NCBI RefSeq assembly: GCF_021869535.1
Contig: NW_026262582.1
Span: 26,474,001 to 26,538,000 of the forward strand
DNA: 64,000 bases
Direction: 5' to 3'
Source: Mytilus californianus
Lineage: Eukaryota
The notes beneath the pieces are model-generated. The model searched no databases and had not been told where the DNA came from. It saw nothing but the letters and a program-made list of their open reading frames with translations. Numbering within the stretch: position 1 is the stretch's first letter; each line of letters starts with the position of its first letter. The translations under genes were made by a program, and so were the position numbers. Shown one piece after another: positions 11,998-63,293 of the stretch.

Positions 11998-12366
11998 CAG
12001 AAATGAAGAATGTAGAAAATAATGTAACATACTGTTCAACTGGCGAAGCAATAACTCTTAAATGCAATTGCAAAGTTTCGTTCTGGAATGGAACTGTAGT
12101 GACAAATATTGAAAATGGAACATATCTTATCATGATCACTGATATATACGGCAAGCCTCAGGTGTGGCATGTATCTATTTAATTTCATAGCGGCAAACTT
12201 GCAAATACGCTGCCAAAGAAACCTTCCGAAAAACTAAATGTAATTGGTGAGAACTTTGATCTTCGAATAACAAATTTGTCTACCTCCGACGAAGGTCTAT
12301 ACATATGTGAACTGAACGAAAAGTGTTTATTAGTGTCACCAAGTCGATACCTTCTTCAAAACAAAT
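11998..12366 (+). pseudogene. Copy A exon: N-terminal V-like Ig domain with in-frame stop
   Basis: tttttag acceptor and t|gtaagt donor. Reads STGEAITLKCNCKVSFWNG...VSI*FHSG...DLRITNLSTSDEGLYICELN; about 66% identical by hand count to 55851-56213, where Y replaces the stop. Confidence 0.9.
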
Positions 12367-13446
12367 GTAAGTAGATATTTACGGTCAAGTATAAACTTAA
12401 TCAAGTATTTAGTTATTATCAATTAATTTGTTTTTATTGTGATAAAAATATAGTCTTCAGATGTATATGAATACATGTATTTTTAAGTGGGAGTCGAATA
12501 CCAGATATCACATTCTGCAAAGTTCGTCTATTGAACGCGTATAATATGGATCTATTAAGAAATTACCCAGATTAATAATTATTATTATAATTATGTATAA
12601 CATTTTGCCAGCCGAGCATGACTTCTATTTGACAAGAAAGACTAGAAATACATGTATAAGGTGACATAGTGCATGTGACATTATAGAATTTAAAGCTACT
12701 TTTGTTACTTTTTGAAATGAAAGCAAGCGGCGAATGACATTTTCTATGACGCTCAAAGGCGCTTCTTGCCTAAAATATGATTCGTCACTTGCTTTAACAT
12801 CAAACATTTAATGATTATATTTACAAATCTTCGACAATATTTTGAATATAAAAACATAGCAAAATTGGTGTTGTCATATGAATAAAGTATTATCCCACTT
12901 GAAATCAATTCAATATTTTAGAGTCCAATGAACTAGGTAATAACTTCGAAAACGTATACCAGAAGAATGTTATTGAATACAAGCGTTCTAAGCAATAACA
13001 TGCTAGCAAATGAACATAAAAAATGACGTAAATACCTTCTTTGGGTGCGAACAATAAAATTTCCAATATTTGTTTAGGTTCAGAAATTGGAAATTGAACG
13101 CATAAGAGTTGATGTTTTCATAATGTAGAATTCTATTTCGAAGTAAATACATGTAGCTCATACAATATCTTTTTATTAAAATTTTGATAATTTTAAGGGT
13201 AATTTATATAAGTTTACTTAAATAAATTGGTTTTATAGACACAAAACTATTTTCCACCTTAGGGTGCCTCTTGCATGAAGGGTGAAGTCATATAGCACGT
13301 GACCTATGCCATTAATAATTTGCAATGGAGTAGTTTTGTCGATTCTGTATAGACTAAACTTAATATCATTTCATATTCATTCATGATTAACTTTATACAT
13401 AATATTGATACTTACTGGGAGTATTGATATCAAGAAACGTTTCACA

Positions 13447-14623
13447 ATGAGTGGCCGAAAACGGCCAGCGCGGCATGATCCAAATCATCCCATGCGTTGG
13501 AACAAAGAACAATATGTCAGCCATTTGAAGAATATGGGAATTTTAGTCAAGTCTACCCGAAGAGTTAGATATGATTCGACAACTTTATTTTGTAAATCAA
13601 AAGGACATTCAAAATTTAACACAAAGTGATCCGGAACCACATGATAGCAATGTCAATGATGTGCCAGTCGCTGCCGATGAGCAACCTTTCGTAGAGACTA
13701 ACCAACATTCAAACGAGAACAGCACACCTTCACGTACAGATGAAATGTTGAAGGATTGTACTTCCTCGCTATTGTCGGCAAATGTTGAACAAACTTTCCA
13801 CAGACAAGAAGACACTTCAAAAGGGATTGTATTTGCGGAGGATTTACCGAAATTGGACTACGTGTCGACTTCCTTGCGCAAGCAAATTTGAGAAGGTAAG
13901 GACATAAACCTTTCTTCATTACTTTATCCAAAGAACGAGGTTCCCCAAATACGCTCTGTCTTTTCTGAAGGGCTAACTGTAGAGTTATCAGCTCCTACGG
14001 ATCCTCGTCTAGAAAAAAGTTTGACACTTGATGAGTTCAACAAGGCCTTCATGAAATTAAGGAACATCATTTGTAAAGTGTACTCTCAACAGCGAGATGC
14101 ACTCGATCAATACGAGGCCGATATAAATGATATAGCCTGTAACTACGGACCAAGATTTTATAGATATCACAAATTGTTTTTAGCTAAGGCCGCCAATGCT
14201 ATAATAGAACATAACACCGCCATTAACTGGGGAAAGGTAGACGCCTGTCTGTTGCATTTGGCCATGAATGGTTTGCAAAGTAGAGAATGCCAACTCTGTG
14301 GAGATTACGACTACACAACGAAGTTCTGCCAAAAACAAGTATATCAAGAAACTCCTTCATCCGCCCCACAAAACACGACGAACGCTCGTGTGCTAGATAA
14401 ATCAAAAGATAGGTATGGGAGGAGTATAGTTCAAGCAGATGGTCATGATCTGTGTAATAACTTTAATTATGCAACATGCAAATGGAAAGATTGCAAATTT
14501 ACACATGCGTGTCTTAAGTGTAAAAGTAGAGGTCGTGGCTTTAAGACATGTGTTAACAATAACAAGGATACCAGTAATCAAAACAAAACCGCTGATAAGC
14601 CTAAAGTCAAAACAGTTAGGTGA
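13447..14623 (+). pseudogene. Ngaro gag-like ORF1 (frameshifted)
   Basis: MSGRKRPARHDPNHPMRWNKEQY... through LCNNFNYATCKWKDCKFTHACLKC, a C-x7-C-x4-C-x3-H finger of Ngaro type. Confidence 0.75.
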
Positions 14624-14629
14624 CTCGTA

Positions 14630-15848
14630 GTGAATGATGATTTTCCATTATCTCACATCAACGTAAATAACCTTGAAAAAGAATTAACAAAACACCCAGA
14701 TAGGCATTTTGTAAAATATTTATTAGACGGTATAAAAAACGGTTTTGATACCATGGTGACTATAAGAGAATTTCCAAATAAAAATCTACAATTTCCGAAA
14801 TCCAGACAGCATTGATAGTATAATTAAACAAGAGGTTGATAAAGGTTATCTAATGGAGCCATTTAAAAAGCTAACTTTTGATAGGTATCGTGTGAGTCCA
14901 ATAGGTATAGTGGAAGGCAAATATTCAGGGAAAAAGAGGCTAATAGTTGATTTGTCGTCTCAAAAAAGTCACGATCATTCTAGTATTAACGATTTAATCG
15001 ATGAAGATCAATGCTTGCTGTCATACGTTAAAATAGATGATGCAATCAACGCAATTCGGCCGATTTTCAATATTAAATAAAGCGGACATTGCAAATGCAT
15101 TCAAACAATTAGGGATCAAAAGGGAGCAGCATCATTTATACTGTATCAAATAGAGAAATGTATATTACTATTATGTGCATCTTTGTTTTGGCTCACGATC
15201 TTCACCTAAAATATGTGACAATTTGTCAGAAGCAATTTGTTGCATAGCCAAGAACAATTACAATACTCCAGTTATACTTCATCTGCTTGATGATTTTTTA
15301 ACTGTTCAAGCATCTGACACTTCAGGTGACAGAACTATGGCAATAATCACCTTAAATTTTAATAGATTGAATATACCATTATCTAAGAAAAAACTTAAGG
15401 TCCACATACCACATTAGAGTATCTAGAAATTATTTCAGACACAGATAAGATGGAAGCTAGACCTCCACAAGATCAGGTTGAACGTATTATTTACTTCATC
15501 GAAACATTTCTACGTCGACACTCTATTAAAAAACAAGAACTTTTACAACTCTTGGGACATTTCAATTTTGCTGCGAGAGTCATTATACCTGGAAGGACTT
15601 TTGTTACATATCAAATAAACCTATCTACTAAAGTTAATAATCTCAATTACTATGTTTCACTGTCAACCGAATGTCGAGACGATTTAAAGATGTGGTATAT
15701 TTTTCTAAAACAGTGGAACTGCGTCTCCTTTTTCTACGATACTTTCATTACAAGTGCTGCTGACTTGGACTTGTATACAGATGTTGCTTCAACACTTGGC
15801 TTCGGGGGGTACTTCAAGGGACATTGGTTTTGTAGTTCTTGGCCATCG
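14630..15848 (+). pseudogene. Ngaro reverse transcriptase and partial RNase H
   Basis: SPIGIVEGKYSGKKRLIVDLS, LCFGSRSSPKI, LHLLDDFL (YxDD-like), LGHFNFAARVIIPGRTF, LYTDVASTLGFGGYFKGHWF. Confidence 0.9.
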
Positions 15849-16745
15849 GAACACGTACAAAGTATGAGTGTGGGTATTCTGCTTATGCAACCTTCTTACG
15901 AATGACTGGGGTGATTTGGAGTAACTCAGACACGCCTCCGTTAACTGAAGATTCTCTAATTCCCTTCGCTACGCATTGTTTCAAAAACTTGCATTTGAAA
16001 TGTTCTACAATTAAAATGTATATATGTGGAATACGATATAAATATTTAGAGTTTGGGAAGCCTTCGATATTTGGCGACGGTTCTGATAAACCTTATCGAC
16101 TCGGTGCCTTATATAGAGGAATAAAGAAAAATGAGAAAAAATCAACAAAACCTAGACTGCCAATTACCTTCACGATACTACGGGATATTTGTCAGTTTTT
16201 GAGGAAGGTTATTACACGCCGTATATAGACATTCTTTTGGAAGCAGCGTGTGTCACGGCATATTTTGGGTTCTTCGATGTGGTGAATTTACAGTATTACA
16301 TTCTTTTGATTCAGAATGCAATGTGTGTATCGAAGATATCCGGTTTCTAAAGGATAAAGTGACCTTTCATTTGAAAGCTTTTAAAACAGACCCATTTCGT
16401 GAAGGTGTTGATATTCATTTATTTGCGTCGGGAGCTTCGGTTTGACCAGACTTATCTCTGGAACATTACGTGGAATTTCGTAATAGAAAATTTAAAGAGA
16501 GTAAAACACAAAACGCTTTCTTTGTGATGGAGAATAGAAAAGCTTTAACACGAAACTATTTCATTTCTTCTCTTAAAAAGATACTTTCCGTACTTGGATA
16601 CAATTCAGACTTATATAATGCGCATAGCTTTCGCATTGGGGCCAGTACCTCTGCAGGTTCAGTAAAATTGAAGATCACCTTATTCAGACACTCGGACGAT
16701 GGAGTTCACAGTGTTATACTCGATATAGCAGAGCATCTTTGTTAA
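15849..16745 (+). pseudogene. Ngaro tyrosine recombinase (frameshifted)
   Basis: PRLPITFTIL, LRCGEF (catalytic R), LKAFKTDPFREG and HSFRIGAST (H-x-x-R) motifs. Confidence 0.9.
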
Positions 16746-16902
16746 CGATAAAGCAAGCTTAACAAGCATTAGTCGAGTGAAGATTTATTGCTTACATATT
16801 GTACCTAGGCATATATAAATCGCATATGCTTTCATCTTGATTAAATGTTGTTAGTGCCTAGGAGTGTTGGGGAATAAAAATCCCATACGTGTATATATAG
16901 AC

Positions 16903-17800
16903 ATGAGAAGATGTGGTATGAGTGCCAATGGGACAACTCTTTATCCAAGTCAAAATTTATAAAAGTAAACCATTATAGGTCAAAGTACGGTCTTCAACAC
17001 GGAGCCTTGGCTCACACCGAAAAGCATGCTAAAAAGGGTCCCAAAAATTACTAGTGTAGAACCATTCAATCGGGAAAACCAACGGTTCTAGTCTTTATAA
17101 AAAACGAGAAACGAGAAACACTTATGAACCACATATACAAACGACAACTACTGAACATCAGATTCCTGACTTAGGACAGGTGCAAACAATTGCAGCGGGT
17201 TTTAACGTTTTAATGGTACCAAACCTTCACCCTTATCTGAAACATTAGTGTAACATCACAACATAGAAAGACACACTATAAAATATCACTTGAAATGGCT
17301 TAACTCAATCAAAAGACATATTAACACCAGTGAACATACACTGAACAAATATATTTGATCTATGATACAGTGTAAATACAAAATAAATAAACTAAGGGAA
17401 GAATAATTAAAGTAACATGTTCTACCGCTGTGAAATGTTAAACAATTGAAGAAAAACAATATGTTTGAACAAAAATATCAGCCATTTGCAATTACTTTAA
17501 ACACAGGTAAATGAAAATAATTTTGTTGTTAGGTATACGTGTACAGTTCAAATGGAGAAAGGAAATATTTTTACAAAATAAATAATTTTGATGTTTATAG
17601 TACGAAGAAGTGACAACTTATAGTAATACCAAATACTTATGAAAGCTGGTATATAGACTAGATTTAACCTTGAATAAGTACACATTAAATAACAAAAAAG
17701 CATTATAATTAGTATCAACAGGTCAAATACACAAGACAGTACGATTTGAGAGTACTCGCAGTTACTGACAGCTAGTTAAAAGCCAAACACAATTATTAAT
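16903..17800 (+). repeat. Long R1-related interspersed repeat (variant subfamily)
   Basis: Starts atgagaagatgtggtatgagtgccaatgggacaact. Near-identical inverted copy at 19420-19962; its 3' part (gagagtactcgcagttactgacagctagtt) is inverted at about 29590-29640. Confidence 0.85.
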
Positions 17801-18541
17801 AACAAATATAGTCTGTTAATTCACACATGTCAGTTCATTGCCTTTTCGTGGTCAACGGCAAAATCAGTGGCGATTTTACTAAGTGTTTTAGGGGCATAAT
17901 AATCCCCATTGTTTGTATCTGATATTGGTTTAAAGTGTATTTTGATAGTGTTGGGGCATAATAATGCGCATATTATGTAAATAAATATTGAGGTGTCATT
18001 GTCCTTATTGTGTCTTCCTTGGTTATGTGTAAAAGTAATTGCTAAAAACATAGAAATTGTTAATTACCACAATCAGTGACGTAACATTTTCATTGAATGA
18101 GACGATGATTAAGCATTTGAGATCAAGTTATTCAGTATGACAGTTACCGATATTCTTGATATTTGCACTAACTGATTAATTATGTACATAATAAATCATT
18201 ATAGTATAGCCGAAGCTGAGAACTTTATTATCAAAAGTTCCTTGACATGTTTCAGAAAGTCATGTTAAGGTCAAGTAGCTAGAACATTGAAATTTCATAA
18301 AGATCGTAACATTTCTTCTCATTTCCCGCTGAGGTAGACGGTAGTTAATCAGAACACTTGTGCTTAGCAGTTGTAAATTTTACAATGTTTTCCAGCACGC
18401 CTGAATTACATACTGATAAACGATTAGTATTGAATGTTTTAATAGCTATATCTCTATTCCCATCTGATATTACGTTCATTAGTATATTATTTCACATATT
18501 GAGATATATTAATTTGATTACAAATCTTTGTTCAAGAGATA

Positions 18542-18748
18542 CTGTAAATTCAGAAATTAATGCGTGCATTTATTATTGCTATTTTTGAAGAAAATACAAA
18601 AATGCGAGATTTATTCTTGCGATTTCAGAAAAATCTGCATACAGATATATGAATCATCTATTAAAATGCGAATTCTTATCATTACGATACTCACCCAGTC
18701 GCATTATTTGCATTAATAAAAACCTTGCAATAATTCCTAAATTTACAG
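18542..18748. mobile_element. Tc1/mariner-type MITE
   Basis: ta|ctgtaaattcagaaatta ... taattcctaaatttacag|ta: imperfect TIRs with TA on both sides. Confidence 0.75.
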
Positions 18749-19419
18749 TAGTGTTGTGCTGATTGTAGGGGGATTTTTCTTGTTTATATTGCAAGTTACT
18801 AAAATAGACAGAAGTTCTGTAAGTAAAGATGTTTTATTTTCAGGTTCCAAAAATCAAGTCTACATTGTATATTCAATAAACAATTACAATCAATTATGAA
18901 TAAATCATGCATCCATAAATCAATAAACAATGATCAGCCTTTACAGTCTCACATACAACTTATTTCAAAGGGGAATAACTCATCAGGGGAATTAACTCTG
19001 TAACTTTCAATAGTTATATTTCTTTAAAAAGGGGGGAACCTAACTCAAGAGCCTTACTCGCATATTTTCTTTAATTGCATAACTAAATATATTTCTTTGA
19101 ACATTCCAGATAATTCACAATACTAAATCAATGCTGTCTCTTAATAATTGCCTTTTCATAAATTTAAGTTAACTTACTAATCAAAACAGGTACATGTACT
19201 TAATACTCTAAATTGAAAAAGGGACTTTATATTTCTAATAATTAAAATGTTGTATGCAAGACTTGCTAATAACATAAAGGAAATGATATGTGTATATTTT
19301 ACTATCTGAATCAATCTAAATTCTAAGTATTCAAAATATTAACATGTACCTGTGTTTAAAGTTATTGCAAATGGATGGTATTTTTGTTCGAGCATATTGT
19401 TTTTCTTTAATTGTTTAAC

Positions 19420-19962
19420 ACTTCTTACCGATATAACATGTTACTTTTTTTATTATTCTTCCCTTAGTTTATTTATTTTGTATTTAAATTGTGTCATAGG
19501 TCAAATTTATTTGTTCAGTGTATGTTCAATGGTGTTAATATGTCTTTTGATTTAGTTAAGCTATTTCAGTTGATATTTTATAGTGTGTCTTTCTATGTTG
19601 TGATGTTACACTATTGTTTCAGAAAAAGGGTGAAGGTTTGGTACCATTAAAACGTTTAAACCCGCTGCATTTGTTTGCACCTGTCCTAAGTCAGGAATCT
19701 GATGTTCAGTAGTTGTCGTTTGTTGATGTGGTTCATAAGTGTTTCTCGTTTCTCGTTTTTTATATAGATTAGACCGTTGGTTTTCCCGTTTGAATGGTTT
19801 TACACTAGTAATTTTTTGGGGCCCTTTATAGCTTACGGTTCAGTGTGAGCCAAGGCTCCGAGTTGAAGACCGTACTGTGACCTATAGTGGTTTACTTTTA
19901 TAGATTTTTACTTGGATGGAGAGTTGTCTCATTGGCACTCATGCCACATCTTCTTATATCTA
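19420..19962 (-). repeat. R1-related repeat, inverted copy of 16903-17400
   Basis: gtcctaagtcaggaatctgatgttcagtagttgtcgtttg...gagttgtctcattggcactcatgccacatcttc. Confidence 0.85.
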
Positions 19963-20246
19963 TAAATCACAATATAGCTACATTATATAATGAATACCTC
20001 AGTCTCCAGGCTTCAAACATTTCTGCAATTTCTGTAAGTTAAACTTATTGAAATAATCAGTAAAATTAGGGTTTTGAAGATTGTGCGTGTTCAGAATCTT
20101 TAGCGATATAAATTTACACTCAAAATTATCTCCCATGAACTAAGTAATACGTAAGATTCAGATTACCGAACGTCAAGAACTCTTTTGTACAGGAAGGTAC
20201 GTAAATCGTATGACGTCGGGGCAACTATTTGTTTACATTGACGACA

Positions 20247-22729
20247 ATGGACTCTGATTTCAAGAATAAAAACGTCCCGGAAATCAAACAGTTCTTAAAA
20301 AACAGAGGGGTAAAAACAACTGGATATAAAAAAAAACAAATTAGTTGAACTAGCAGAAGAAGCTGAATTACAAAAGATTCCCCCTTTTGAACCAGACAAT
20401 TAAATATTCGCAAATAAAATACGCCGAACTGTAGATGGTGTTGTGTTGCCGCATCCCAGGACTGTTATTGATTGGTCTGAAGATTTAAATGCAATTCCAA
20501 TAATTGAAGCGTTTGATGTTAATCATTATTTAAAAAAACATTTGTAACTGGACAAATGAACGTTTGAAAGGCTATAAAAATGACAACAGTTACCGTCTTC
20601 ATTCTGATGGACATATCCGTGATGTTAGGCAGTCTAAATTTCACAACGATATACATTATGTAAAAGCAGCATGTGTACCAGAAGAGAGACAGTCTGCTGA
20701 CCCATACGAAGTTTGGGTAGTGGTCCTATTTGATGGGTCAATACATTCAGCAGAATGTACATGTGTGGCGTAAGTTTTTACATGCATAATCCGAGTCCGA
20801 GGGTGTGGATGCCGATGGGGTTTACAGAATAGAGAATAATGGGCAGAAACATATTAATGGGGTGTTAAAATATAAAGAATAACTTAACAAAAATAATGAA
20901 TTGGTTAAAATATATACTGATTACAGAAAAGAATAATATTAAGAATACAGTTATCAAGTAATTACAGCTAGAATACTGATTAGCCATTATTTTTTTAAGA
21001 TAAAAAAAGAATATAATGAGCGAAAAAAAAAATTTAAAAACTAAATAATCCCATCAAGAAATGAAAATAGATTCTTTAAGACAACAGCTCATGCAATTTA
21101 TATTTTTTTCTATGTTCATTGTGTTGTAATTAAAATATGAAACAATTGCATTAAAAAAATTGAATTGTAAATTAATTTTGATATCCTCAATTCCACTTGT
21201 AAGGTTGGATTTGCACACAATGTGAACTGTTGTGATATAAGTTGAATCTAAATTTGAATCTGTAAGGAAAGTTGGTCTTGTGTATTTTTATTATGTCATC
21301 TGTTTATGATCTTTAACCTACATGTACCATATTGTCTGTTCACTCAAAATTAACTGTAAAGGGCACATAAAATTAATTTCTAGTTTTTTCTCTCAGAATT
21401 ATCACCTTCAAAAAAGGGATGCAAACAAGCGTGGAAAAACAACATAGTCATAAGTTGATTTTTCAGAGACAAAAGAATGTTTTTTTCAAGCAACATAAAT
21501 TTTATTTATTTATTTTTTAAATATAGAGAAACAGTGTTATTTAAATGTTTAAACCCTCGAGCCCTTCTAATAAACAAATACTTGAGTGTATATAATTGTT
21601 TTACAGTGGTGATGGAACATGTAAGCACGTGGCAGCACTCATGTTCGGGATGCAAAGATTTTGTCAGGATTTGTCCGATAGATATGATGTTTCTGTTACT
21701 GACAAGGCAGCTAAATGGGTTAACCCAGTCAGGACATCAATCAGCTCCAGCTAAAATCACCTCTTTAGATCTGAGGAGTGAGCCTAAAGGACAACCACCA
21801 ATTAAACCAACAAGTGACCTTCTTGTCATAACATGTCACCTCATGCTGTAGAAAAAGAAATGCTGCGGTTAATAAAATCAGAAAACTTACCAGCATGCGC
21901 AGCTTATGTTCTGTCAGATAGATCTGGTTCTGAGTATGATTTTGAGTGTGTGCCTGTCAACATGCTAGATCTAGCAACACAATTTAATAATGATGATTCA
22001 TCAAATGATTCACTTGAATCTTTTATTGAGCACATACATAGAAATATCCCTGATAATTATTTCACTGATATATTCGAAAAGACTATCAGTCAGAGTGATA
22101 GTGATTTGTGGTTTTATCAGAGACATGGCAGAATAACTGCTTCCATTTTATATAGTTGTCTTCATTTTTCAGGAAGAAACCCTGATGGTCATCTAGTCAA
22201 ACTCATTTTAGGTCTTGCAAACAGTGTTAATTCAGACTTGCCTGCTTCAAGACATTGACAAAAATATAAACATGTTGCTAGAGAGTCTTATCTTCATGAC
22301 AAAAAAAACTTGCATGATAATTTAGAATGTAAATTATCTGGATTTGTAATTGACAACAACATTCCTTACTTAGGTTGCTCTCCTGATGGTCTACTAGAGT
22401 GTAAATGCTGTGGACAAGGTTGTTTGGAAATAAAATGTCCATATAAATTTTCCGAAGAAACTCCCATCAATGCTGCTTGTTTAGACAAAACAAACTTTCA
22501 CATAGAAAATGATACTCCACTTATGAAGAGAAATGACACATCTCCGTATTACTGTCAAATTCAATGTCAGCTTGCAGTTACTAAAAGAAAATGGTGTGAT
22601 TTTGTATTATTTACTTTTAAAGGTGTACATCATGAGATAATACCATTTAATGAACAATTTTTGTCTAATGTTTTACCAAAACTTGCATCATTCTACAGTT
22701 CATATGTTCTACCAAAACTTCTGCTATAG
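20247..22729 (+). pseudogene. ISL2EU accessory gene: SAP-like + SWIM zinc finger + YqaJ (lambda-exonuclease) domain; exons 20247-20769 and 21607-22729
   Basis: FKNKNVPEIKQFLKNRGVKTTG (SAP-like). The GT/AG intron joins ECTCVA|GDGTCKHVAALMFG (SWIM). LGCSPDGL..CLEIKCPY..YYCQIQCQL..WCDFV is the YqaJ motif set. Several frameshifts and a TGA at 22256-22258. Confidence 0.88.
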
Positions 22730-23320
22730 CGGTCAGAATTACACATGTACCAGTTAATTACTTTGTTTGAAGTTAGTACCATTCACAATATAAAGCAGTG
22801 ATAAGGTTTGGTTATATAATTTAATTTGATTAAACATAACAAAAATAAACTATATTTAACATAATAAATAGATAAATATCATCTTTTATTTTAAGACATC
22901 TAATGAGATAAGTTGCTTTCATTATTTAAAAACATAATGTAAATATTCTCTATTCTAAATTTATATAAGACAACTCTTTCAAATTGGAGATAACCTACTA
23001 GTTTGCATAGACGTGTACATCTATTATTTTTGACAAAATCTTAACCACAAAATTTTAATTATGAATATATGATAAAGCCATATTTCCACTACTTTTCAAT
23101 TTTTGAAAGAAAATTTTAGAACAGAATAATTCGCTTATCAAACTGTTGATATTTTTTTAATTTGTATTATTAACATGATTAACAAAATGATTAATAAAAG
23201 AAAAAAAGAAACACTGAGAAAAAAAAAATTGCCAATCATTGCTCCTTTAATTAATATATATGTCAAATTAATTTCAAATGATAAAACAGAGCACGTTTTA
23301 TAACTTTTGAACTAACGGTT

Positions 23321-24398
23321 TCATGAGGTTACAAAAAATGCTGCAACCTTAAGAGCCTGATTAGCAACAGAAAGTGAATTTATTGGCATAACACCACTTA
23401 AGAACTTATAAGATTTCAGTCTCTGGATTGATATTTCTACATGTATTCTCAAAGAGGCTATGGATTTTGATTCCTTAATCTCCTTTGCCGTAAGGCATCT
23501 TCCTTTTCCATGTTTACATGGTCTGGTAAACGGTGGCATATTTAAGGTGGCACCTTTTGATAATAATAAGTCTTTGATTAAAAACCCTCTGTCAGCCATT
23601 ACATGATCCCCCTTTTCAATCATATCAATGAATCCACTTCTTTCTGTAATGCTCCTATCAGAAATGTTGCCAGTCCATAAGTCAGATATAAACAAAAAAG
23701 CGTCATTTGGTGTAACACCTACAAGTGTTTTAAAAGTGTTCTTTGACTTGTAATTTGACCACGTTTTTGACTGTGCTGTTGGGTTTCTTGGTCTCTGCAC
23801 ATAAAATTCAGTAGCATCGATGATTACACGAGTGTTGGGATATATTCTACGAAATGATAGAGGCATGTGTTTTTTTTATATTTTCCTTAGATGGCCATTT
23901 AATAAGTGGTCCTAAACATTGTGCCATTAAAGATATCCAAGTCGTGAAAACCCTGCTAATTGTTGACTGTGAAACACCAAACAAAAGAGACAACACATAT
24001 GTGTTTAGTCCTAGCCTTAACCTCAAAAGAGTTATAATAAATTCTTCAAAAAAAGTCAACTTCCGTGAAGCCCCAGGTTTTTTCTTATTATTTACTTGCC
24101 ATCTTTTACCGTCACTTGAGTCGGGACCCATCCAGTATTTCATTTTTGAAGCATGTCCTTCCAATAATTTAAAAATTCCAAAAAGCATTGAAATACTTGG
24201 CAGTCCGAGAAAACATTTAACATTACTATTTGATTTGGTCAACTTTTCAACAAGTTTGTCCTTTAGCAGTTCATCTGTATTATTAAACTTCCCATTTAAA
24301 TTTTTATTTTCCTCTTTGGTAGTATGTAGTTCAACTTGTAGCAATTTAACTTGCTTCCGTAGCTGGTTATTATCTGTCTTATATCTTTGACATTTTTG
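23321..24398 (-). pseudogene. ISL2EU transposase main exon (HTH + DDE_Tnp_4 type)
   Basis: LLRLRLGLNTYVLSLLFGVSQSTISRVF (HTH), IIDATE, MADRGF and RIHVE (D, D, E). One frameshift in the homopolymer run near 23870. Confidence 0.92.
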
Positions 24399-24739
24399 CT
24401 GTGAAAAAAAGTAATAATTATAAATATAATCAATGCAAACAATTTATGAAATAATTTTGTATTTTTTATTTACTTTAGTCAAGTTGGTAACAATTAAACA
24501 ATGCAGTTGTATGATCGATTGATTTTTGGTTGTTTAACATTCAGTGGCAAATATTTCATGCATGTTCAGAACGAAATACAGTTGTTATATTGTAAAATGA
24601 CTAATAAAAAACAGTTAATACTATATTTCAACATGTCTAACATGTCTAAGTTGGATTACAAATTTAAAAAGTAAATATATATTTAGTAAAATGTTTGAAT
24701 AGATCATATATAATATTGATGTATTAATTTGAATATAAA

Positions 24740-25709
24740 TTAAATGCTTCGCTGAGCGCGGCCTGATACGACCGCAGAGGTCGAACCCTGAACAGTTGGG
24801 GCAAATTTGGACACAATATTCAAGCTTGATACTGTCTGAATTTGGATTGTAATCAAATTTTTGACATAATATAGGTTTCTGACACAAAATAAATGTGGTC
24901 AAAGATCTTATAAATCCATTGCGCAATACTGTGCAATTGAAGATTTCTTCTTGAAACTTTTCATAAATTCGAAATTTTAAAAATTTTGAAAAAAAATGAA
25001 TCTCTTAAAATAAATTGGGGAAAAAATTCCCCCCCAAACGTTTTAACCCCCCCCCCCCCCCCTTGGAGCAATAACCCAAAAACTCAATCTCAGTCTTTCC
25101 TTTGTAGTATGGAACCTTGTAGTACAATTTCAGAGAGATCCATACACTTACACACAAGTTATTGTCTGGAAACTAGAAAAATGCTTGTTGTTAGCCCTTT
25201 TTTGGCCTCTAATTCCTACATGTTTAGAGCAATTAAGTCCAAACTCAATCCTAGCCTTCCCATTGTTATATGGAACCTTGTGGTATAATGTCAGAGAGAT
25301 CCATACACTTACACACAAGTAATTGTCTGGAAACTAGAAAAATGCTTGTTTTTGGTCACTTTTTGGCCCTTAATTTCTAAACTGTTGGCCCCATAACCCC
25401 TAAAATGGGTCCCAACCTTCTACTTATGGTATTAAACAGTGTGGTACAATTTCAGAGCAATCTAAATCCTTATACACAAGTTATTATCCTGAAACTAGAA
25501 AAATGCTTGTTTTGGACCCCTTTTAGGGCCCCTAATTTCTAAACGGTTTGGACCATCATCCCCAAAATCAATCCCAACCTTCCTTTTGTGGTACTAAACC
25601 TTCTTAAAAAATTTCATAAAGTTATTGTCGTGAAACCAATGTGTCTTCGGACGACGCAGACGACATCATACCATTATACGATCCCAAAAATTTTTTGCGA
25701 TCGTATAAA
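24740..25709 (+). mobile_element. Helentron-associated non-autonomous element nested in the transposase intron
   Basis: About three ~160-bp tandem units (ggaaccttgt..atttcagagagatccatacacttacacacaag..ctggaaactagaaaaatgcttg), gacgac remnants, and a terminal hairpin ttatacgatc..gatcgtataa at 25673-25708. Confidence 0.7.
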
Positions 25710-27006
25710 CACCTTGCTTCCTACATTATATCATTTTTGAAGTACATGTATAAGCTGTCATCTAATGAATTAAAAACAAATCAATTTTTGATTGAAATAT
25801 TATTTCTATAGTTCAGAAAGATTAAAAAATATCTATTACATGGCTTTTGAATCTTATATCCAATGGATGAATTTTCAATATCAAATAAAATCAATGAAAA
25901 CTTCAGTTAAGATAATTTAAAAAAAAATCTCACTTAATTTCACACCTCTAAGGTGTTGTTATTTTCAATTAATAACACATTTTTCTTCAATGGAGACATC
26001 TTCACTCACTTCAGTGCTAAAGCAATAAGTGTGGTCTAAACTTGGCTTTTCAATGTAGGAAATTACTGAAAGTAAGTAAATATGAACAGTACCATTTGAA
26101 TTAGAATTATTTGACTACAATGTACATCAGTTAGGCTCTTAGACCGGTTGATTTAAAAGAATTAAAGTACAAAATGTGTAATTCAGAAAGTTGAAGTAAG
26201 TAATTATCTTGTGGGAACTAGAACCATAACTCTCATAACACATATTTTTTCTACTGGACCTATAAGACTGTCCACCAGTATCCCAGTTGATGGTGTAGTG
26301 TGCAGACACAATTCATGTGCGACTCATATTTATCTTTGCAAAATACTTTTTACATTTTGGTTTTTAAGTTAAGTTTATTTTGTGATAAAATAATATTGGC
26401 AATTATTTTATCTTGACATTGTGAAGATAAATTGTTTTAAATTTGATATTTTACTTTTATATTTGTATTTTAATTAAAATAATATTATAATTGTTATTTA
26501 GCATTGTTTACTAACTGATTTTATATCGTCATTGATCAGCATTCATCAAAATTGTTATTGTTAAATTAAATTATGAAAACCTTCTATGCATTTTAACTAT
26601 ATGCCTATCAGAACATGCAGTCATGCAATAGACTGACCCCCATGTTCCTTGGTTCAGTTACATGTAGCTCCCTCTGATTTAACAGTACAATGGTGGCACA
26701 CTTACTTTTCAGGATGAAAAATGTTGTCCTGTCTATTTATTTTTCCCTCTATTCGGTCCTGCCTTTTTATTTTTCACTCTATTCGGTCCTGTTTTTTTTT
26801 TTTAGTTTATCCTGACTTTTTTTTTAAATAAATTGTCATCCTGCCTTTTTTTTTTTAGCAAATAATCTCATCATGCCTTTTTTTTACTCAAAACTCCTGT
26901 CCTGCCTATTTTTTTCAAATTTCATCCTAGCCCCCCCCCCCCCCCTCCCCCCCCCCCCCTGAAAATAAAATGGTAGCTCCCTAATTTCAACTATTTTGTT
27001 ACTTAC

Positions 27007-27368
27007 TGTGTTGTGAAAATTAATTGTTCAATGGGACGTAAATGACTGTTCTTGGTGTCTCTTGGTGTTCCAGTTTTGTAGTTGTTGTAGGCAAAAAGGG
27101 TTGGGACTGCATTTTCCTTCGTAGGTCTTCCTTCAATAAAATGACGGGAGCAAAGTGCATGCCAGTGACAATTTGGGTCGGGATTAAACCCTTCCCTTCT
27201 TATCTGAGACAACCAGAGCTTCCTTAGTTTAGGATTCTTTTAGGCTGAAGGAAGTACATGAAAGTCGACGATACATCCATTTAAAACCATATCAGGATAC
27301 TTTAGGGCATTATGTTTCTTTTGTGAATCGTTGGAGCAACCCTCCGCTATGCAGTGAAAATTCACCAT
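27007..27368 (-). pseudogene. ISL2EU transposase first exon: THAP zinc finger
   Basis: MVNFHCIAEGCSN...LP..*..LWLSQIRR...LCSRHF...AVPTLF matches the THAP C2CH plus AVPTIF box. One in-frame TAA near 27240; donor gtaagt at 27006-27001. Confidence 0.88.
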
Positions 27369-28668
27369 GCTTCTTTTCGAAGCTTTACCGCTCAAAAACT
27401 ATCAAAATAATTTTACATGACGTACATTTTGTACATGTGTTTCGACACAAAACATGCCCATAATAACGCAAAATCTCGCAGTAAACGTTATCACTAGGGC
27501 GAGACTAAAGGTAAACTCAAATACGGAACGGATAATATGAATCTTACGTATTATAAAACTTATTCCGGAGTAAATATGATAAGTTCCGTAATTTAGTAGT
27601 GTTCTCTTTTTAAACGTTTAACCTTTTAATTACTTTTAAAATTAATATCTTAAAAACTTATAATAACTCACATTTAACATAAAACTTATTTACAGCTAAC
27701 TTTAACATTACAAGACTTATTCAAGAGAATATGTCCATTTTGTAAATAAAATATTATATACAATTTGTCCTTAAAGTACAACAGATATTAATAAATCTTG
27801 ACTCTAATTAATTATAAATTTAGTATTAACTTATTTAATTCAAAATCGTTTTATAAAAATTAAATGTTACATTAACTCACCTAAAATAGACAGAAGTTCT
27901 GTAAGTAAAGATGTTTTATTTTCAGGTTCCAAAGATCAAGTGACGCTAAAACATAATTTTGGATATTCGAAATTTTAGTCACATGACCTTCTTCTATTTT
28001 CTCCAATCAAATGCCAAATAGTAATTAAAACGACTTCCCATAATTTATTTCATTGGTCATCAATTACCTGCTGACCATTTAAGCTTTTGTCAATCATTCT
28101 GTCTTAATTCTTAGCGTCCCTAGTAAACGGATTATCTAACTTTTACCTATGAACAAAGAAGATAAATAATTCCCTTTGTTCCTTTAAATTAAAATACTTC
28201 CCAAATACAATTGACATTTTTTTACTTGGATTTATCTATTTACTTTATAAAAGTCTTTATTAGCTAAAAGTACTGACATCTAGTACTTACAAAAGAGACT
28301 TAATTAACATGCTCTTTGATATAAAACTTTACGTAATACTATGTACAACATATCTGTGAAATTATATAATTAACTTTTAATTCTATTTACAAGTTTCCAA
28401 CTCCAGTTAATATTTAAAATTATATTTTTCATCATAAATCCTTTTTATAGGGTAACATAAATTATATTCAATTCTTCAAGTATGAATTTTCTTTATAAAA
28501 AGCATTATAATTTCACTTTCTTATAAAATCTATATTATTTCCTTTTATTCAAATTAAGCATTCTTTCTCTTTCTTTTAATGGAAATATAAAATTTCCATA
28601 TTTTGTTTATTTTTCCTTCACTAAAGTAGCCATCTTCATTTGGGGTTCAGTTGTCTCCTTTAAGTAAT

Positions 28669-28793
28669 AGTAAAAACTCAATGATAAGTTAATATTGATA
28701 CTAAAAGACCTCCGAACAAAAAGGGATTTGAACATCCCTTTTTGTGAGGAGGTCTTTTAATGTCAATATTAACTTAATCATTGAACTTTTACT
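28669..28793. repeat. 125-bp near-perfect hairpin
   Basis: agtaaaa..tcaatgat.aagttaatattga..taaaagacctcc..acaaaaagggat, 6-nt loop, then the reverse-complement arm. Confidence 0.9.
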
Positions 28794-30122: not shown

Positions 30123-30547
30123 TATGTATGTTTGAGTGGATCGATTAAAACGTGTATAGATGAGATATTGTCGCAAGGCTGATCATCATTCTTAAATTGA
30201 AATGCAATGTATTATATGAAAGAAAACACTTTTGTTCTAGTCGTCCGTCATTCCCTTTTCACGTTTAAATGTAGCATAAACAAACACCCTAAACAAAAAA
30301 AAACTGTTACCATTCTAAGTTTTTTAATCGCCTGACAAAATCGTATGTCATAAATCGCAATAAAAACCGAAGATAAGAACTATAGTAAAACATTTTTTTT
30401 TTATAAGTGTTCAGTTATGTACAGTAAATTGCAAAACCATAAATATAGTTTGCACTATTATTGAGTGATTTAAATGGAATTTTTAAATTATAGCATTTTA
30501 CAAGATTTTGTCTTCGTGTACTATGCACATGGAATAATTAAGGGAGT

Positions 30548-46855: not shown

Positions 46856-47457
46856 GTCATTGTTTGTAGATGTGGTGCATTTCTGACCTGTATGTGTAAG
46901 TGAAAAAATCAAACCAGAATAAAAAAAAAACGCTAGCTACACCAACAAGAACGAAAATTGAATATTACCATGACGACAAGGAATAAAATGGACAACATAA
47001 ACCCATTAAAACGTACGACGGATTTTTTTAAATAAGATATTCGACGAGTGAAGTAGACTCCTCTAATCGTATTTACATTATTACAATCCTGTCTTTTTTC
47101 GTTGTTTCGGTGAAAATTTTAGGATGGTTATGAAAAACCATACACGACATTCGATTCGTTGCAAATAATGGAGGTGGAGACAAACATGTTTATCACAAGA
47201 CCAAACAAAACTGGAACTATGATAAGTCAACCCCCTTCAAAAATGCTACTTTTGGGCATTCATTTGAGTTCACAGAACAGGCTTTTTTTCAATGGAAAAA
47301 AACTAAAACAATTTTTATGCGAATGAAGTGCACCAAAGTGCAAACATTAATTATGGTGGAAAAATACTCTAAGGAAACAGACAATGATTTCCAACGGTCA
47401 AACGTTTATAAACAAAGGAAAACCACAAAATATATCAACTTGTCTTTTAAACAATAA
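46856..47457 (+). pseudogene. Orphan last exon of a third Ig-receptor paralogue (copy C); clear homology at 47123-47457, 5' boundary uncertain
   Basis: DGYEKPYTTF / 5-bp attcg duplication at 47149-47158 / VANNGGGDKHVY..NYDKSTP..DFQRSNVYKQRKTTKYINLSFKQ* aligns with 40241-40555. Confidence 0.8.
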
Positions 47458-47556
47458 AGTTTTAAAATGCCTGACTATAAATATATATTGTATCTTAATA
47501 CGAAACATTATCACACTATTCTTACATTCTACAACTCTACAGACAGTTCTGATTAT

Positions 47557-55850: not shown

Positions 55851-56213
55851 CTATAAAGACGGTGGACTATAATTTGATATATTTTTCAACCGGTGAAGCA
55901 TTAACTCTTTCATGTAATTGCAAAGTTTCGTTCTGGAATGGACCTGTAGTGACACATATGGGAAATGGGATATCGCCAGTTCCGATAACTGATATCTACG
56001 GCAACCTTAAAGTATTGAATGTATCCATTTACATGCAAAGGGGTATACTAGCAAATACGCTCTCCAAGAAACTTTTCAAAAGACTAAATGTAGTTGGTGA
56101 CGACTTTGGTCTTCAAATAACAAACTTGTCTACCTCGGACGAAGGTTTATACATATGTGAACTAAATGCATTTTGCTTCATAAAACAAAAACGATATCTT
56201 CTTCAACATAAAT
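55851..56213 (+). CDS. Ig-superfamily receptor copy B exon: N-terminal V-like Ig domain (open)
   Basis: ttttcag acceptor and gtaagt donor; 363 nt, phase 1-1. Reads LTLSCNCKVSFWNG..FGLQITNLSTSDEGLYICELN. Confidence 0.88.
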
Positions 56214-57302: not shown

Positions 57303-57304
<2 letters not shown>

Positions 57305-58618: not shown

Positions 58619-58900
58619 TGCGTCCATCAAAATTAGAAATTCTAAACGTAACTCGTGATGATACTGTAAACGGAAAAGAAAATTGTCAACTGAATCTTGT
58701 TTGCTTGGTTAAAAGAGGGAAACCACCTGAAGTACTTAAATGGAGAAAGAATGGATCTATTATAAGGCATGGAGGATCAAACAGACTTGTCTATACCTTT
58801 GTTCCCAATAAAACTGATCATCAATCTATTTATACATGCGAAGCACAAAATCCAGATATGGAAAAACCGCTTACCAAGTCAATTCATCTAAACATTAAAT
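58619..58900 (+). CDS. Copy B exon: Ig domain 2 (open)
   Basis: 282 nt, phase 1-1: LNLVCLVKRGKPPEVLKW..YTCEAQNP. Confidence 0.9.
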
Positions 58901-61548: not shown

Positions 61549-61587
<39 letters not shown>

Positions 61588-61589
<2 letters not shown>

Positions 61590-62463
61590 GTCTATAAAAA
61601 GGACCAACCAGCAAATTTACTATGTACCGGATCGTCTAGAATAGACGATACTGTGCAGATAAGGAAAAAATTATATAAGTCTAGAGATTTGCACAACGAT
61701 ACTAATATAAGATGGTATTATACGAAGATGTTGTTAATAAATCGTGTTGACAAATATTTCGGCTTAACAAATAGCCTTCTTCGGTGTCAATTATTTTAAC
61801 AATACTGATAATATGTATAAAAATAGCTCAATAATACAGGTAAGTTTTGGTCTATTGATTTAATCCAAAATCCTGAACATCATAATATAAAACAAAACTC
61901 AATACTCAAATATACGTGACTGTGTATATTTGCAACCCAAAATGAGTGAAAAATAAAACTTAGTATTTTTTATTGATGCCGTTTGGATGATGTACATTTA
62001 GTTCCTTTATCCAAAAGATTTCCCGAACCTGTCGCTGGGCATCACTCCAGTGAATGTTCTGTTCAATCACTAGGATCTTCATGCGGTTAAAGTCATCAAG
62101 TGTGTGACCAGACTGTCTGAAATGCTGAGAAACTGGGAGAAGTGGCTTCTTAGAGATATCACTCCTATGGCCATTGAGGCGTTTGTGGAAAGGCTGCTTT
62201 GACTCACCAACATATTGGAGGCCACAAACCGAACATTCTAGAATGTAAATAACATTCATACTTTTGCAGTTAACATTGCAAAATATCTTATAGTTATTTT
62301 CGGTTGCCTTACTGTGAAAAGTTGATGAGTGATGCATCTGTAGGCAGCATTTGCAGCGTTTTTCATCACACGAACGACATTCTCCAGAAGTACTTCCACA
62401 AACGCCTCAATGATGCGTATAATACCATCTTATATTAGTATCGTTGTGCAAATCTCTAGACTT
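61588..62463 (-). mobile_element. Penelope-like 3' fragment: Cys-rich linker plus GIY-YIG endonuclease ORF (61960-62390), with 48-bp inverted terminal repeats
   Basis: CRSCDEKRCKCC..NVIYILECSVCGLQYVGES..RLNGHRSD..REIFWIKEL..PNGIN. 61677-61724 and 62416-62463 are exact reverse complements; (TA)n on both sides. Confidence 0.92.
61747..61790 (-). ncRNA. Minimal hammerhead ribozyme motif in the PLE 3' repeat (one core substitution)
   Basis: Reverse complement uugaca-CCGAAGA-a-ggcu-auuuguua-agcc-GAAA-uauu-ugucaa; stems I and II pair perfectly. Confidence 0.6.
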
Positions 62464-62500
62464 ATATATATATATATATATATGCATAATTACTTTTCAG

Positions 62501-62767
62501 ATACGCCGTCCGTTAGAATAAATGTAAGCAGTTATTTAACAGTGGTGGAAGGTGAAATCGCACATATCTGTTGTATATCAAGGAGTAATCCGAACCCGAC
62601 ATCAATATCCTGGTATGAAGAGGATAAAAAATTAGTTTCAACATTTAGTAATTCTTCACTGTGCTATAAGATGAGTAATGTGAGTCGTAATGCCACTGGC
62701 AAGTACACATGCAGTTCCCGGAACGAGATTGGTGATGCATCTAGTGAGATCTCGCTAATTATTTCAT
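62501..62767 (+). CDS. Copy B exon: Ig domain 3 (open)
   Basis: 267 nt, phase 1-1; about 76% identical by hand count to 34939-35205. Confidence 0.9.
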
Positions 62768-62990
62768 GTAAGAATTTCACTTCCAAATATCTAATATTTC
62801 TTCGAATTTTTTCGAAATAAATTATGATAACGTCACAAGAACGATCAGGTGTTTTTTGTTTATCTTGTCAAAATTTCGAATAGTTGCTGAGTAAGAAGTA
62901 ATTCATGATTCACCATATTTTACCCCTTCACAAAACAAGATGCATATACAATCCTCAAGATCATTAAAATTAACCAATTTTTATTTATAG

Positions 62991-63293
62991 ATCCTCCTGT
63001 CATTAATTTTCGGTACAGAAATTTGACTGAATATAGCAAAAGAGAAATTCGATGTCTTGCCAAAGGGGAACCAAATACGTATAATTACTTTATGTGGGAA
63101 CACCAATCCCTGTTTAACGAACATATAAGATATCTAAACGAGGCAGATGATGGAATTCTTCGACTGCCAGAAATCAACGGATCAAACATTTACCAAGATA
63201 CAGGGTTTTATATATGCAATGTTTCAAACGGGATTCCTGATTAACGTGGGAATGTTTTTCAGCTAGGTAGAGCGTACTACCTTGTATCGATAG
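62991..63293 (+). CDS. Copy B exon: Ig domain 4 with in-frame TAA at 63242-63244
   Basis: ttatag acceptor and g|gtata donor. Reads PPVINFRYRNLTEYSKREIRCLAKGEP..YQDTGFYICNVSNGIPD*RGNVFQLGRAYYLVSI; copy A has TAT at this codon. Confidence 0.8.

What the first reader, a model, noticed from the sequence alone, without database searches (positions are those of the whole stretch)
11998..63293. Tandem cluster of 5-Ig type-I receptors with an ITIM/ITSM-like tail, in birth-and-death turnover
Seen: at least three paralogous units sharing one architecture. Each Ig domain sits in its own phase 1-1 exon, followed by a TM exon and a tail ending V-E-Y-I-N-L (copy A) or T-K-Y-I-N-L (copy C). Established: (I/V/L/S)xYxx(L/V) is the ITIM consensus and TxYxx(V/I) the ITSM; both recruit SHP phosphatases in clustered vertebrate receptor families such as SIRP, CD33-Siglec and CD300. 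Inference: this is an independently expanded, possibly inhibitory immune or allorecognition receptor family in a bivalve, which automated annotation might label only as a generic adhesion or hemicentin-like protein. I cannot confirm that the family is undescribed.
Basis: partly seen in the sequence, partly recalled or inferred. Interest (0 to 1): 0.72.

Follow-up and report, generated by a model that had tools for sequence, protein, structure and literature searches.

The report
Decaying mussel Ig-receptor gene cluster
This stretch of the California mussel genome holds three broken or fragmentary copies of a Mytilus-only family of immunoglobulin-type surface receptors that share a conserved tyrosine-rich signalling tail; the family is real and apparently undescribed, but these copies are dead or dying, and the claim that the tail is inhibitory is only weakly supported.

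Summary
The paralogous units are real. Every Ig exon is phase 1-1, and the tails end VEYINLSLKQ* (A) and TKYINLSFKQ* (C). The genome is Mytilus californianus.

All three units are damaged:
- A has at least 8 disabling lesions.
- C is only a ~340-bp relic of the tail exon.
- B runs 8 kb past the window. Its one lesion seen is a TAA replacing a Tyr codon in Ig4. RefSeq annotates only its 3' half, as "uncharacterized protein LOC127717860".

The tail occurs at 30-47 or more places in this genome, in several clusters. In a search of 1.84 billion proteins it appeared only in Mytilus species, attached to varying Ig or Ig+FN3 ectodomains.

Conserved across the family are GYExPYxxL, HVYL, YEN and the C-terminal EYINLxLKQ. 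Asn at +2 is effectively fixed. Position -2 is an ITIM-type residue in only 16 of 59 tails. No ITSM or ITAM is conserved.

Best reading: a lineage-specific family of phosphotyrosine-docking receptors in birth-and-death turnover. The signalling sign is undetermined, and pYxN (Grb2-type) docking fits at least as well as ITIM. This is a new member of a known kind.

The parts
11998..12366 (+). Unit A, exon Ig1 (V-set-like), phase 1-1, with an in-frame stop (…VSI*FHS…).
   Evidence: 60% aa identity to B Ig1. Stop seen in the translation. Boundaries ttttag|…|gtaagt.
12367..33452 (+). Unit A, intron 1. It is 21 kb long, against 2.4 kb in B, and is swollen by transposon remnants.
   Evidence: ORF list. 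YqaJ-like domain at 22259-22726 and HTH_Tnp_4 at 23850-24443 on the minus strand.
33453..33733 (+). Unit A, exon Ig2 (C2-type), with a 1-bp deletion that shifts the frame near 33568.
   Evidence: The tblastn match splits across two frames. DNA alignment shows GAAGT-CTAAC in A against GAAGTACTTAA in B.
34939..35205 (+). Unit A, exon Ig3 (I-set/Ig_3), open reading frame.
   Evidence: Pfam Ig_3 E=3e-11. 76% aa identity to B.
35444..35748 (+). Unit A, exon Ig4. The splice acceptor is lost (tatag to tatac). There are two in-frame stops and a 1-bp deletion in the G strand.
36479..36811 (+). Unit A, fifth ectodomain exon. A divergent Ig-like domain, open reading frame, B- and F-strand cysteines retained.
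   Evidence: No Pfam hit. Family alignment. AF2 model of unit Z's fifth domain (first row of the family alignment that includes this exon), pLDDT 86.6. Best solved-structure matches are titin, myomesin and Dscam Ig domains, TM 0.5-0.59.
37784..37894 (+). Unit A, transmembrane exon (…VTIITIIAFLIIIVVLVTGMGIYV), phase 1-1.
   Evidence: Hydropathy scan and sequence.
38856..38883 (+).
   Evidence: Found by an AG…GT scan. The identical peptide in B is part of RefSeq XP_052079678.1.
39353..39456 (+). Unit A, juxtamembrane exon (…DESSHNADIIEADNILTPSQ). The family's conserved Tyr is replaced by Asn.
   Evidence: tblastn with P0012. Sequences. B and Z have SSHYADII and SSHYAEII.
40108..40555 (+). Unit A, tail exon. 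The acceptor is shifted (ttcag|G to ttcaa|g). There are two frameshifts relative to B and a TGA at 40451-40453. It ends VEYINLSLKQ*.
47117..47460 (+). Unit C, an isolated frameshifted relic of the 3' part of a tail exon, ending TKYINLSFKQ*. No other exons of a unit lie nearby.
55851..56213 (+). Unit B, exon Ig1 (V-set-like), open, phase 1-1.
   Evidence: Pfam V-set E=1.3e-5, 25.8 bits, just under the cutoff. Boundaries.
58619..58900 (+). Unit B, exon Ig2 (Ig_2/C2-set), open, phase 1-1.
62501..62767 (+). Unit B, exon Ig3 (Ig_3/I-set), open, phase 1-1.
62991..63293 (+). Unit B, exon Ig4, phase 1-1, with an in-frame TAA at 63242-63244 (GIPD*RGNVF). Unit Z and M. coruscus P0012 have Tyr at this position (GIPDYH). 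The rest of B lies beyond the window. In window-extended coordinates: fifth domain 65529-65861, TM 66840-66950, micro-exon 69603-69630, juxtamembrane exon about 70351-70454, tail 71653-72107.
   Evidence: RefSeq's ORF for this locus starts at a Met in the fifth domain, downstream of the TAA.

Best explanation
The window is part of a roughly 210-kb tandem cluster on a Mytilus californianus chromosome (C2, 26.36-26.58 Mb). The cluster belongs to a Mytilus-restricted multigene family of single-pass Ig-superfamily receptors.

Architecture. An intact member has:
- a leader (not found here);
- a V-like Ig domain;
- two to three further Ig domains;
- a divergent membrane-proximal Ig-like domain, followed by FN3 domains in some subfamilies;
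- a TM helix and a basic stop-transfer micro-exon;
- a juxtamembrane exon with Yx(E/D)I;
- a ~150-residue acidic, Ser/Asn-rich tail with fixed tyrosine motifs: GYExPYxxL, HVYL, YEN (often twice) and the C-terminal EYINLxLKQ-COOH.

Inferred mechanism. Ligand-driven clustering leads to tyrosine phosphorylation of this tail, which then docks several SH2 proteins. The Asn fixed at +2 in two to four motifs per tail points to a Grb2/Drk-type adaptor. YExP points to Crk/Nck-type SH2 domains, and Yx(E/D)I to Src-type. In the local subfamily, which has S, V or I at -2, SHP/SHIP-type phosphatases could bind as well. Whether the net signal is activating or inhibitory cannot be read from the sequence.

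State of the three units. They are products of birth-and-death evolution:
- A is long dead.
- C is a relic.
- B is a recent tandem duplicate of A that carries one nonsense codon. It can at best produce an N-terminally truncated product without a leader.
For: Shown:
- Exon structure, phases and lesions.
- A and B are colinear through their introns at 78-90% identity.
- The species, and RefSeq's partial model of B, which matches my exon joins exactly.
- The tail exon matches at least 30 places with the A tail as query. P0075, the RefSeq protein of B's 3' half, gives 47 exon matches. They lie in clusters on C2 (3.2-3.5, 26.4-26.6, 26.9, 27.9-28.2 Mb), C110 (82 Mb) and C136.
- Within this cluster the tails of L007, L017 and L023 are broken, and L008 lacks the TM and juxtamembrane exons.
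- The upstream unit Z has open Ig3, Ig4, fifth-domain, TM, micro, juxtamembrane and tail exons.
- dN/dS is 0.24-0.47 for B versus Z (TM exon 0.79, 33 codons) (dS 0.6-1.1) and 0.53 pooled for A versus B (dS 0.34). This means purifying selection through most of their history.
- The tail profile found only 66 cluster representatives among 1.84 billion proteins. All 21 named among the 30 looked up are Mytilus (coruscus, edulis, galloprovincialis, californianus).
- Motif conservation: Y, E, P, Y and L of the core are invariant, and 51 of 80 core-bearing sequences end with YINL within 12 residues of the C-terminus.
- A subfamily member has a signal peptide (P0072).

Established knowledge:
- Grb2 SH2 binds pYxN (PMC10968029, PMC9279350).
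- Oyster IgSF receptors with tyrosine motifs signal in haemocytes (PMC11841013, PMC11999971).
Against: - No leader exon was identified for A, B or Z, and Ig1/Ig2 of Z were not found within 20 kb. No fully intact gene was therefore demonstrated in this cluster.
- There is no expression evidence. RNA run X21 (about 6% of it read, tissue unknown) put zero reads on B's Ig2-Ig4 exons.
- Phosphorylation and SH2 binding are inferred from motif resemblance alone.
- B's single TAA could be an allele private to the reference animal or an assembly error. The read contigs I laid did not resolve that base.
Confidence: 0.7

Rival explanations
1. These are inhibitory ITIM/ITSM receptors that recruit SHP-type phosphatases, like SIRP, CD33-Siglec or CD300.
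For: - B's cytoplasmic domain has three matches to (S/I/V/L)xYxx(I/V/L): SHYADI, STYENL and VEYINL.
- Z has SHYAEI and IEYINL.
- Oysters have IgSF receptors whose ITIMs recruit SHIP/SHP (PMC11841013; CgIgIT and CgIgIT2 cited in PMC11999971).
Against: - Across the family, -2 is an ITIM-type residue in only 16 of 59 C-terminal motifs, 6 of 25 juxtamembrane motifs and 0 of 86 core motifs.
- P0028, P0073 and P0024 have no ITIM match at all in their tails.
- No motif fits the ITSM consensus TxYxx(V/I).
- Selection has held N at +2 and E at -1, not the -2 hydrophobic residue that SHP SH2 domains need.
Confidence: 0.2
2. These are ordinary cell-adhesion IgCAMs (of the NCAM, IgLON or Dscam kind) with no immune or recognition-receptor role. 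On this view the tail tyrosines serve endocytosis (YxxΦ) or cytoskeletal coupling.
For: - The best sequence matches in the PDB are titin, neurotrimin, DSCAM, Robo and NCAM.
- One M. coruscus member is named NCAM.
- Some members have an Ig+FN3 architecture.
Against: - The matches are generic Ig-domain similarity.
- The tail is confined to Mytilus.
- Dozens of clustered copies with many pseudogenes are not typical of conserved neural adhesion molecules.
Confidence: 0.15
3. The apparent gene death is an artefact. On this view assembly or consensus errors create the stops and frameshifts, and the units are functional.
For: - B has only one lesion, a single base in one codon.
- Contigs from other individuals match B's exons closely (X3 contig 62496-63241 has 0 differences) but stop one base short of the TAA.
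Against: - A carries at least 8 independent lesions of different kinds: nonsense codons, 1-bp indels and two altered acceptors.
- C lacks all the other exons.
- RefSeq's model of B starts downstream of the TAA.
- The A-B pooled dN/dS (0.53) lies above most B-Z exon values, which hints at relaxed constraint.
Confidence: 0.05

Closest known systems
Oyster IgSF signalling receptors: CgIgIT, CgIgIT2 and CgNCAM1 of Crassostrea gigas
   Same: - Bivalve type-I proteins with several Ig domains (with or without FN3), a TM helix and a tyrosine-motif tail.
- They are reported in haemocytes and signal through SH2 phosphatases or ERK (PMC11841013, PMC11999971).
   Different: - No oyster protein matched the Mytilus tail profile at E<=1e-3 in 1.84 billion representatives, so the tail is not homologous at detectable level.
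- The oyster genes are described as single genes, not as a multi-cluster family of 40 or more copies.
- The motifs here are GYExPYxxL, YEN and EYINL rather than canonical ITIM pairs.
Vertebrate clustered Ig receptors with tyrosine tails: CD22/Siglecs, PECAM-1, SIRP, LILR/KIR
   Same: - One Ig domain per phase-1 exon.
- Tandem clusters with pseudogenes (birth-and-death).
- Tails that mix YxxL/I and YxN motifs. From my own knowledge, CD22 carries both ITIMs and a Grb2-binding YENV.
   Different: - There is no sequence homology beyond the Ig fold.
- There is no conserved ITIM -2 residue, and no paired activating forms with a charged TM residue were seen.
- The membrane-proximal domain and the tail are lineage-specific.
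Invertebrate polymorphic IgSF recognition families: Hydractinia Alr and the Botryllus fuhc-linked receptors
   Same: Lineage-specific, clustered Ig-like receptors with ITIM/ITAM-like tail motifs and many pseudogenes (bioRxiv 10.1101/2022.03.04.482883, PMC12582321).
   Different: No allorecognition phenotype or polymorphism data exist for this mussel family. Homology was not tested and is not expected.

Membership tests
Immunoglobulin superfamily, type-I membrane receptor | Ig-fold ectodomains | tested here: met
   Pfam V-set, Ig_2, Ig_3 and I-set on Ig1-Ig4. The fifth domain is Ig-like by predicted fold.
Immunoglobulin superfamily, type-I membrane receptor | Single TM helix followed by a cytoplasmic tail | tested here: met
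   TM exon. Joined model confirmed by XP_052079678.1.
Immunoglobulin superfamily, type-I membrane receptor | N-terminal signal peptide | tested here: inconclusive
   No leader exon was found upstream of A or B. B Ig1 begins in phase 1, so an upstream exon must exist. P0072, from a related subfamily, has a leader.
ITIM-bearing inhibitory receptors | (S/I/V/L)xYxx(I/V/L) in the tail | tested here: met
   B has SHYADI, STYENL and VEYINL. A has VEYINL.
ITIM-bearing inhibitory receptors | The motif, including its -2 residue, is conserved in paralogues | tested here: not met
   The -2 residue is S/I/V/L in 16 of 59 C-terminal motifs, 6 of 25 juxtamembrane motifs and 0 of 86 core motifs. Several full tails have no match.
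ITIM-bearing inhibitory receptors | Recruitment of SHP-1/2 or SHIP on phosphorylation | not testable with these tools
   Needs phosphopeptide or SH2 binding assays.
ITSM receptors (SLAM/PD-1 type) | TxYxx(V/I) | tested here: not met
   TKYINL has L at +3 and sits in the relic C. T at -2 occurs in 2 of 59 tails. No ITSM match was found in the delimited tails.
ITAM receptors | YxxL/I-x(6-12)-YxxL/I | tested here: not met
   The regex found no match in any of the ten proteins checked.
pYxN (Grb2/Drk-type SH2) docking sites | Tyr with Asn at +2, conserved | tested here: met
   YINL and YEN are present in every tail that reaches the C-terminus, with two to four YxN per tail. I155 and N156 are nearly invariant in alignment A4. 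This is a sequence-level test only, and binding was not tested.
Orthologue of a named adhesion molecule (NCAM, hemicentin, Dscam, nectin) | Specific full-length similarity, including non-Ig parts, and conservation outside the genus | tested here: not met
   Only generic Ig hits in the PDB and Pfam. The tail was found only in Mytilus.

The most novel reading that the evidence does not exclude
The GYExPYTTL…EYINLSLKQ tail defines a Mytilus-specific receptor module. It has been combined with different Ig and Ig+FN3 ectodomains and amplified to dozens of clustered, rapidly dying and duplicating genes. Its intact members would be haemocyte or epithelial recognition receptors that vary between individuals (presence/absence and null alleles such as B's TAA). 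They would signal through a multi-SH2 docking tail. That would make them a candidate self/non-self or pathogen-recognition system in a genus known for transmissible cancers and massive gene presence/absence variation.
Probability: 0.2. Interest if true: 0.7.

Novelty: new member of a known kind. Interest (0 to 1): 0.42.

Why it matters
Bivalves lack adaptive immunity yet carry large lineage-specific receptor repertoires. A Mytilus-only Ig receptor family with a fixed multi-tyrosine tail is a concrete, testable signalling module. The peptides to test and the SH2 candidates can be named directly.

The clustered turnover of the family gives a handle on how such repertoires evolve. For genome annotation, the result shows that RefSeq's "uncharacterized protein LOC127717860" is the 3' remnant of a nonsense-disrupted receptor gene. 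It also shows that the neighbouring units are pseudogenes.

The window itself holds only dead or dying copies. The value therefore lies in the family it reveals, not in these loci.

Tried and rejected
- **B's second stop.** I first took B's TAA in "SVK*MEN" as a second lesion. The true tail acceptor (tttcag|GA, phase 1) lies downstream of it. Z, P0012, P0028 and RefSeq XP_052079678.1 all show this, so that stop is intronic.
- **Leader exon.** A/B comparison upstream of Ig1 found only dispersed repeats. An ATG plus hydrophobic-stretch scan gave no candidate shared by the two units.
- **Other exons of unit C.** None were found by tblastn or blastn.
- **Ig1/Ig2 of unit Z.** They were not found within 20 kb. 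Either Z is a four-domain form like P0028, or they lie further upstream.
- **The look-up of encoding contigs for the RefSeq proteins.** It returns nothing because the window's own genome is left out.
- **Earlier findings of the scan.** There were none for this place or these words.
- **Literature.** I found no paper on a Mytilus ITIM/IgSF family.
- **Joined models.** I sent no self-made joined (spliced) model to any search tool. Exons were searched one by one by reference, and the database protein P0075 served as the joined model of B's 3' half.

Full report
**What is in the window**

Six-frame ORF extraction and self-tblastn show two colinear exon series on the + strand and one isolated fragment.

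- Unit A runs from 11998 to 40555.
- Unit B starts at 55851 and leaves the window after its fourth Ig exon, at 63293.
- The finding's limits are exactly A-Ig1's first base and B-Ig4's last base.

Pfam recognises the first four domain exons as V-set-like, Ig_2/C2-set, Ig_3/I-set and a weak Ig_3. All B domain exons are multiples of three.

The fifth domain exon has no Pfam hit. It keeps the B- and F-strand cysteines. Folded with a ten-sequence family alignment, it gives a seven-strand sandwich (pLDDT 86.6). Its best solved-structure matches are I-set Ig domains of titin, myomesin, Dscam and the DIP proteins, at TM 0.5-0.59. "Five Ig-like domains" is therefore acceptable.

A TM exon follows.

I fetched 10 kb downstream and 20 kb upstream, then ran tblastn with the M. 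coruscus protein P0012. This showed two further cytoplasmic exons between the TM and tail exons:

- A 28-nt micro-exon encoding R-YLKQMYRK-R. It lies at 38856-38883 in A and at window-extended 69603-69630 in B.
- A 104-nt juxtamembrane exon. B reads …DESSHYADIIEDDNLLTPTQ. A, at 39353-39456, reads SSHNADII, with the Tyr lost.

The real tail acceptor is tttcag|GA in phase 1.

RefSeq protein XP_052079678.1 is [quoted passage not shown]. It lies on a contig of 80,295,649 bp, the same length as C2. It reproduces these joins residue for residue. This identifies the species and validates the model.

**State of the three units**

Unit A carries these lesions:
- a nonsense codon in Ig1;
- a 1-bp deletion in Ig2;
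- a lost acceptor, two nonsense codons and a 1-bp deletion in Ig4;
- a shifted tail acceptor, two frameshifts and a TGA at 40451 ahead of VEYINL.

A's first intron is 21 kb and full of transposon remnants.

Unit C is only 47117-47460. It is a frameshifted piece of a tail exon, with nothing else of a unit around it.

Unit B is open in Ig1-3, the fifth domain, TM, micro, juxtamembrane and tail exons. It has a TAA at 63242-63244 in the G strand of Ig4, where unit Z and P0012 have Tyr. RefSeq's ORF accordingly begins at a Met in the fifth domain, without a leader.

A and B are colinear through their introns at 78-90% identity, so they are a recent tandem duplication.

**The cluster and the family**

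The tail exon matches at least 30 places in the 1.65-Gb genome. P0075, the RefSeq protein of B's 3' half, gives 47 exon matches. The clusters lie on C2, C110 and C136.

In the local cluster (C2, 26.36-26.58 Mb), eight tail exons lie in 180 kb:
- L007, L017, L023, A and C are broken.
- L008 has an open tail but no TM or juxtamembrane exon between a fifth-domain fragment and the tail.
- Unit Z ends 85 bp before the window. Its Ig3, Ig4, fifth-domain, TM, micro, juxtamembrane and tail exons are open.

Elsewhere there are units whose five domain exons show no stops, for example C110 81.79-81.81 Mb.

dN/dS values were as follows:

| Comparison | dN/dS | dS |
|---|---|---|
| B versus Z, by exon (TM exon: 0.79) | 0.24-0.47 | 0.6-1.1 |
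| A versus B, pooled | 0.53 | 0.34 |

These genes therefore evolved under constraint and lost it recently.

**Taxonomic reach and annotation**

A profile of 20 tails was searched against 1.84 billion cluster representatives. It gave only 66 hits. All 21 named among the 30 I looked up are Mytilus coruscus, edulis, galloprovincialis or californianus. Their labels are unnamed, uncharacterized, Ig-like, FN3-domain-containing or NCAM.

The tail is attached to different ectodomains:
- V-Ig-Ig-Ig5 (P0028, P0033);
- Ig plus FN3 (P0011, P0072, P0073);
- repeated I-set domains (P0068).

Sequence comparison with solved structures gives only generic Ig matches. It is therefore not an orthologue of a known adhesion molecule.

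**The tail**

Alignment of the tails shows an invariant core, G-Y-E-x-P-Y-x-x-L. It is followed by HVYL, one or two YEN (or YxN) motifs, and the C-terminal E-Y-I-N-L-x-L-K-Q with a fixed distance to the stop.

Counts over 96 sequences:
- The -2 residue of YINL is A in 29, V in 11, G in 4, P in 4, L in 2, I in 2, T in 2, and others in 5. It is ITIM-type in 16 of 59.
- It is ITIM-type in 6 of 25 juxtamembrane motifs and in 0 of 86 core motifs.
- No ITSM or ITAM pattern is conserved.
- Every complete tail has two to four YxN motifs.

By established knowledge, pYxN is the Grb2-SH2 motif (PMC10968029, PMC9279350). Also from my own knowledge, pYxxP suits Crk/Nck-type SH2 domains and pY-x-(E/D)-I suits Src-type. 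These assignments were not tested here.

The local subfamily (A, B, Z, L007, L008) does satisfy the ITIM consensus at one to three sites. SHP/SHIP binding is therefore possible there, as shown for oyster receptors (PMC11841013, PMC11999971).

I conclude that this is a multi-site phosphotyrosine docking tail whose signalling sign is open.

**Expression**

One RNA run of the same species was examined (raw reads, about 6% read, tissue unknown to me). It gave zero depth on B's Ig2, Ig3 and Ig4 exons, and reads only on intronic repeats. An RNA-library contig at depth 1-2 touches Ig2 and Ig4 but cannot be told apart from DNA carry-over.

DNA contigs of other individuals carry B's exons at single-copy depth. 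None of the listed pieces resolved the TAA base.

**Verdict**

- The family-level inference is supported: an expanded, clustered, lineage-specific Ig receptor family that is poorly annotated.
- The inhibitory ITIM/ITSM label is not supported as a family trait.
- The kind of system is known from oysters and many other animals. This particular Mytilus family appears undescribed in the literature I could search.

Noticed in passing
window 13387-16742 (+): A run of long ORFs (80-243 aa) in consecutive frames inside unit A's intron 1. The four largest gave no Pfam family at E<=0.01. It looks like a decayed mobile element of a type that Pfam does not cover.
   Followed up: partly
window 22259-22726 (+) and 23850-24443 (-): Transposon remnants in A's intron 1. 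One is a YqaJ-like recombinase domain (E=2e-10). The other is a DDE-transposase HTH_Tnp_4 domain (E=7.5e-18) on the opposite strand.
   Followed up: partly
window 61963-62406 (-): An ORF with a GIY-YIG nuclease domain (E=3.4e-8) in B's intron 2, about 95 bp upstream of the Ig3 exon.
   Followed up: partly
window 59068-59400, 59900-60900, 61239-61405: Highly repeated intronic elements. DNA word depth is 10^4-10^5 times single copy. They are abundantly represented in RNA reads of run X21, mostly on one strand for 60237-60904. These are transcribed repeats, not the receptor.
   Followed up: no
L036/L037 (window -10221 to -85; G000:C2:26463780-26473915): Upstream paralogue Z has open Ig3, Ig4, fifth-domain, TM, micro, juxtamembrane and tail exons (tail ends IEYINLSIKQ*). 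It is the best candidate for a working gene in this cluster. Its Ig1/Ig2 and leader were not located.
   Followed up: partly
L008 (G000:C2:26399455-26402748): This unit has the C-terminal 65 residues of the fifth domain followed about 550 bp later by an open tail exon, with no TM or juxtamembrane exon between them. L017 carries a near-identical tail with a frameshift. This points to local re-duplication of already truncated units.
   Followed up: partly
P0011, P0072, P0076 (M. coruscus and M. edulis proteins): Some gene models carry the juxtamembrane-plus-core tail segment twice in tandem (…DDGI…, then again …DDGYEKPYTTL…). This is either internal duplication of the cytoplasmic exons or fused neighbouring genes in the gene predictions.
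   Followed up: no
window 62655-63134 (run X6): A contig from another individual differs from B's Ig3-Ig4 region by 5 substitutions and an in-frame 3-bp insertion after 63034. This is allelic or paralogous variation within Ig4.
   Followed up: no
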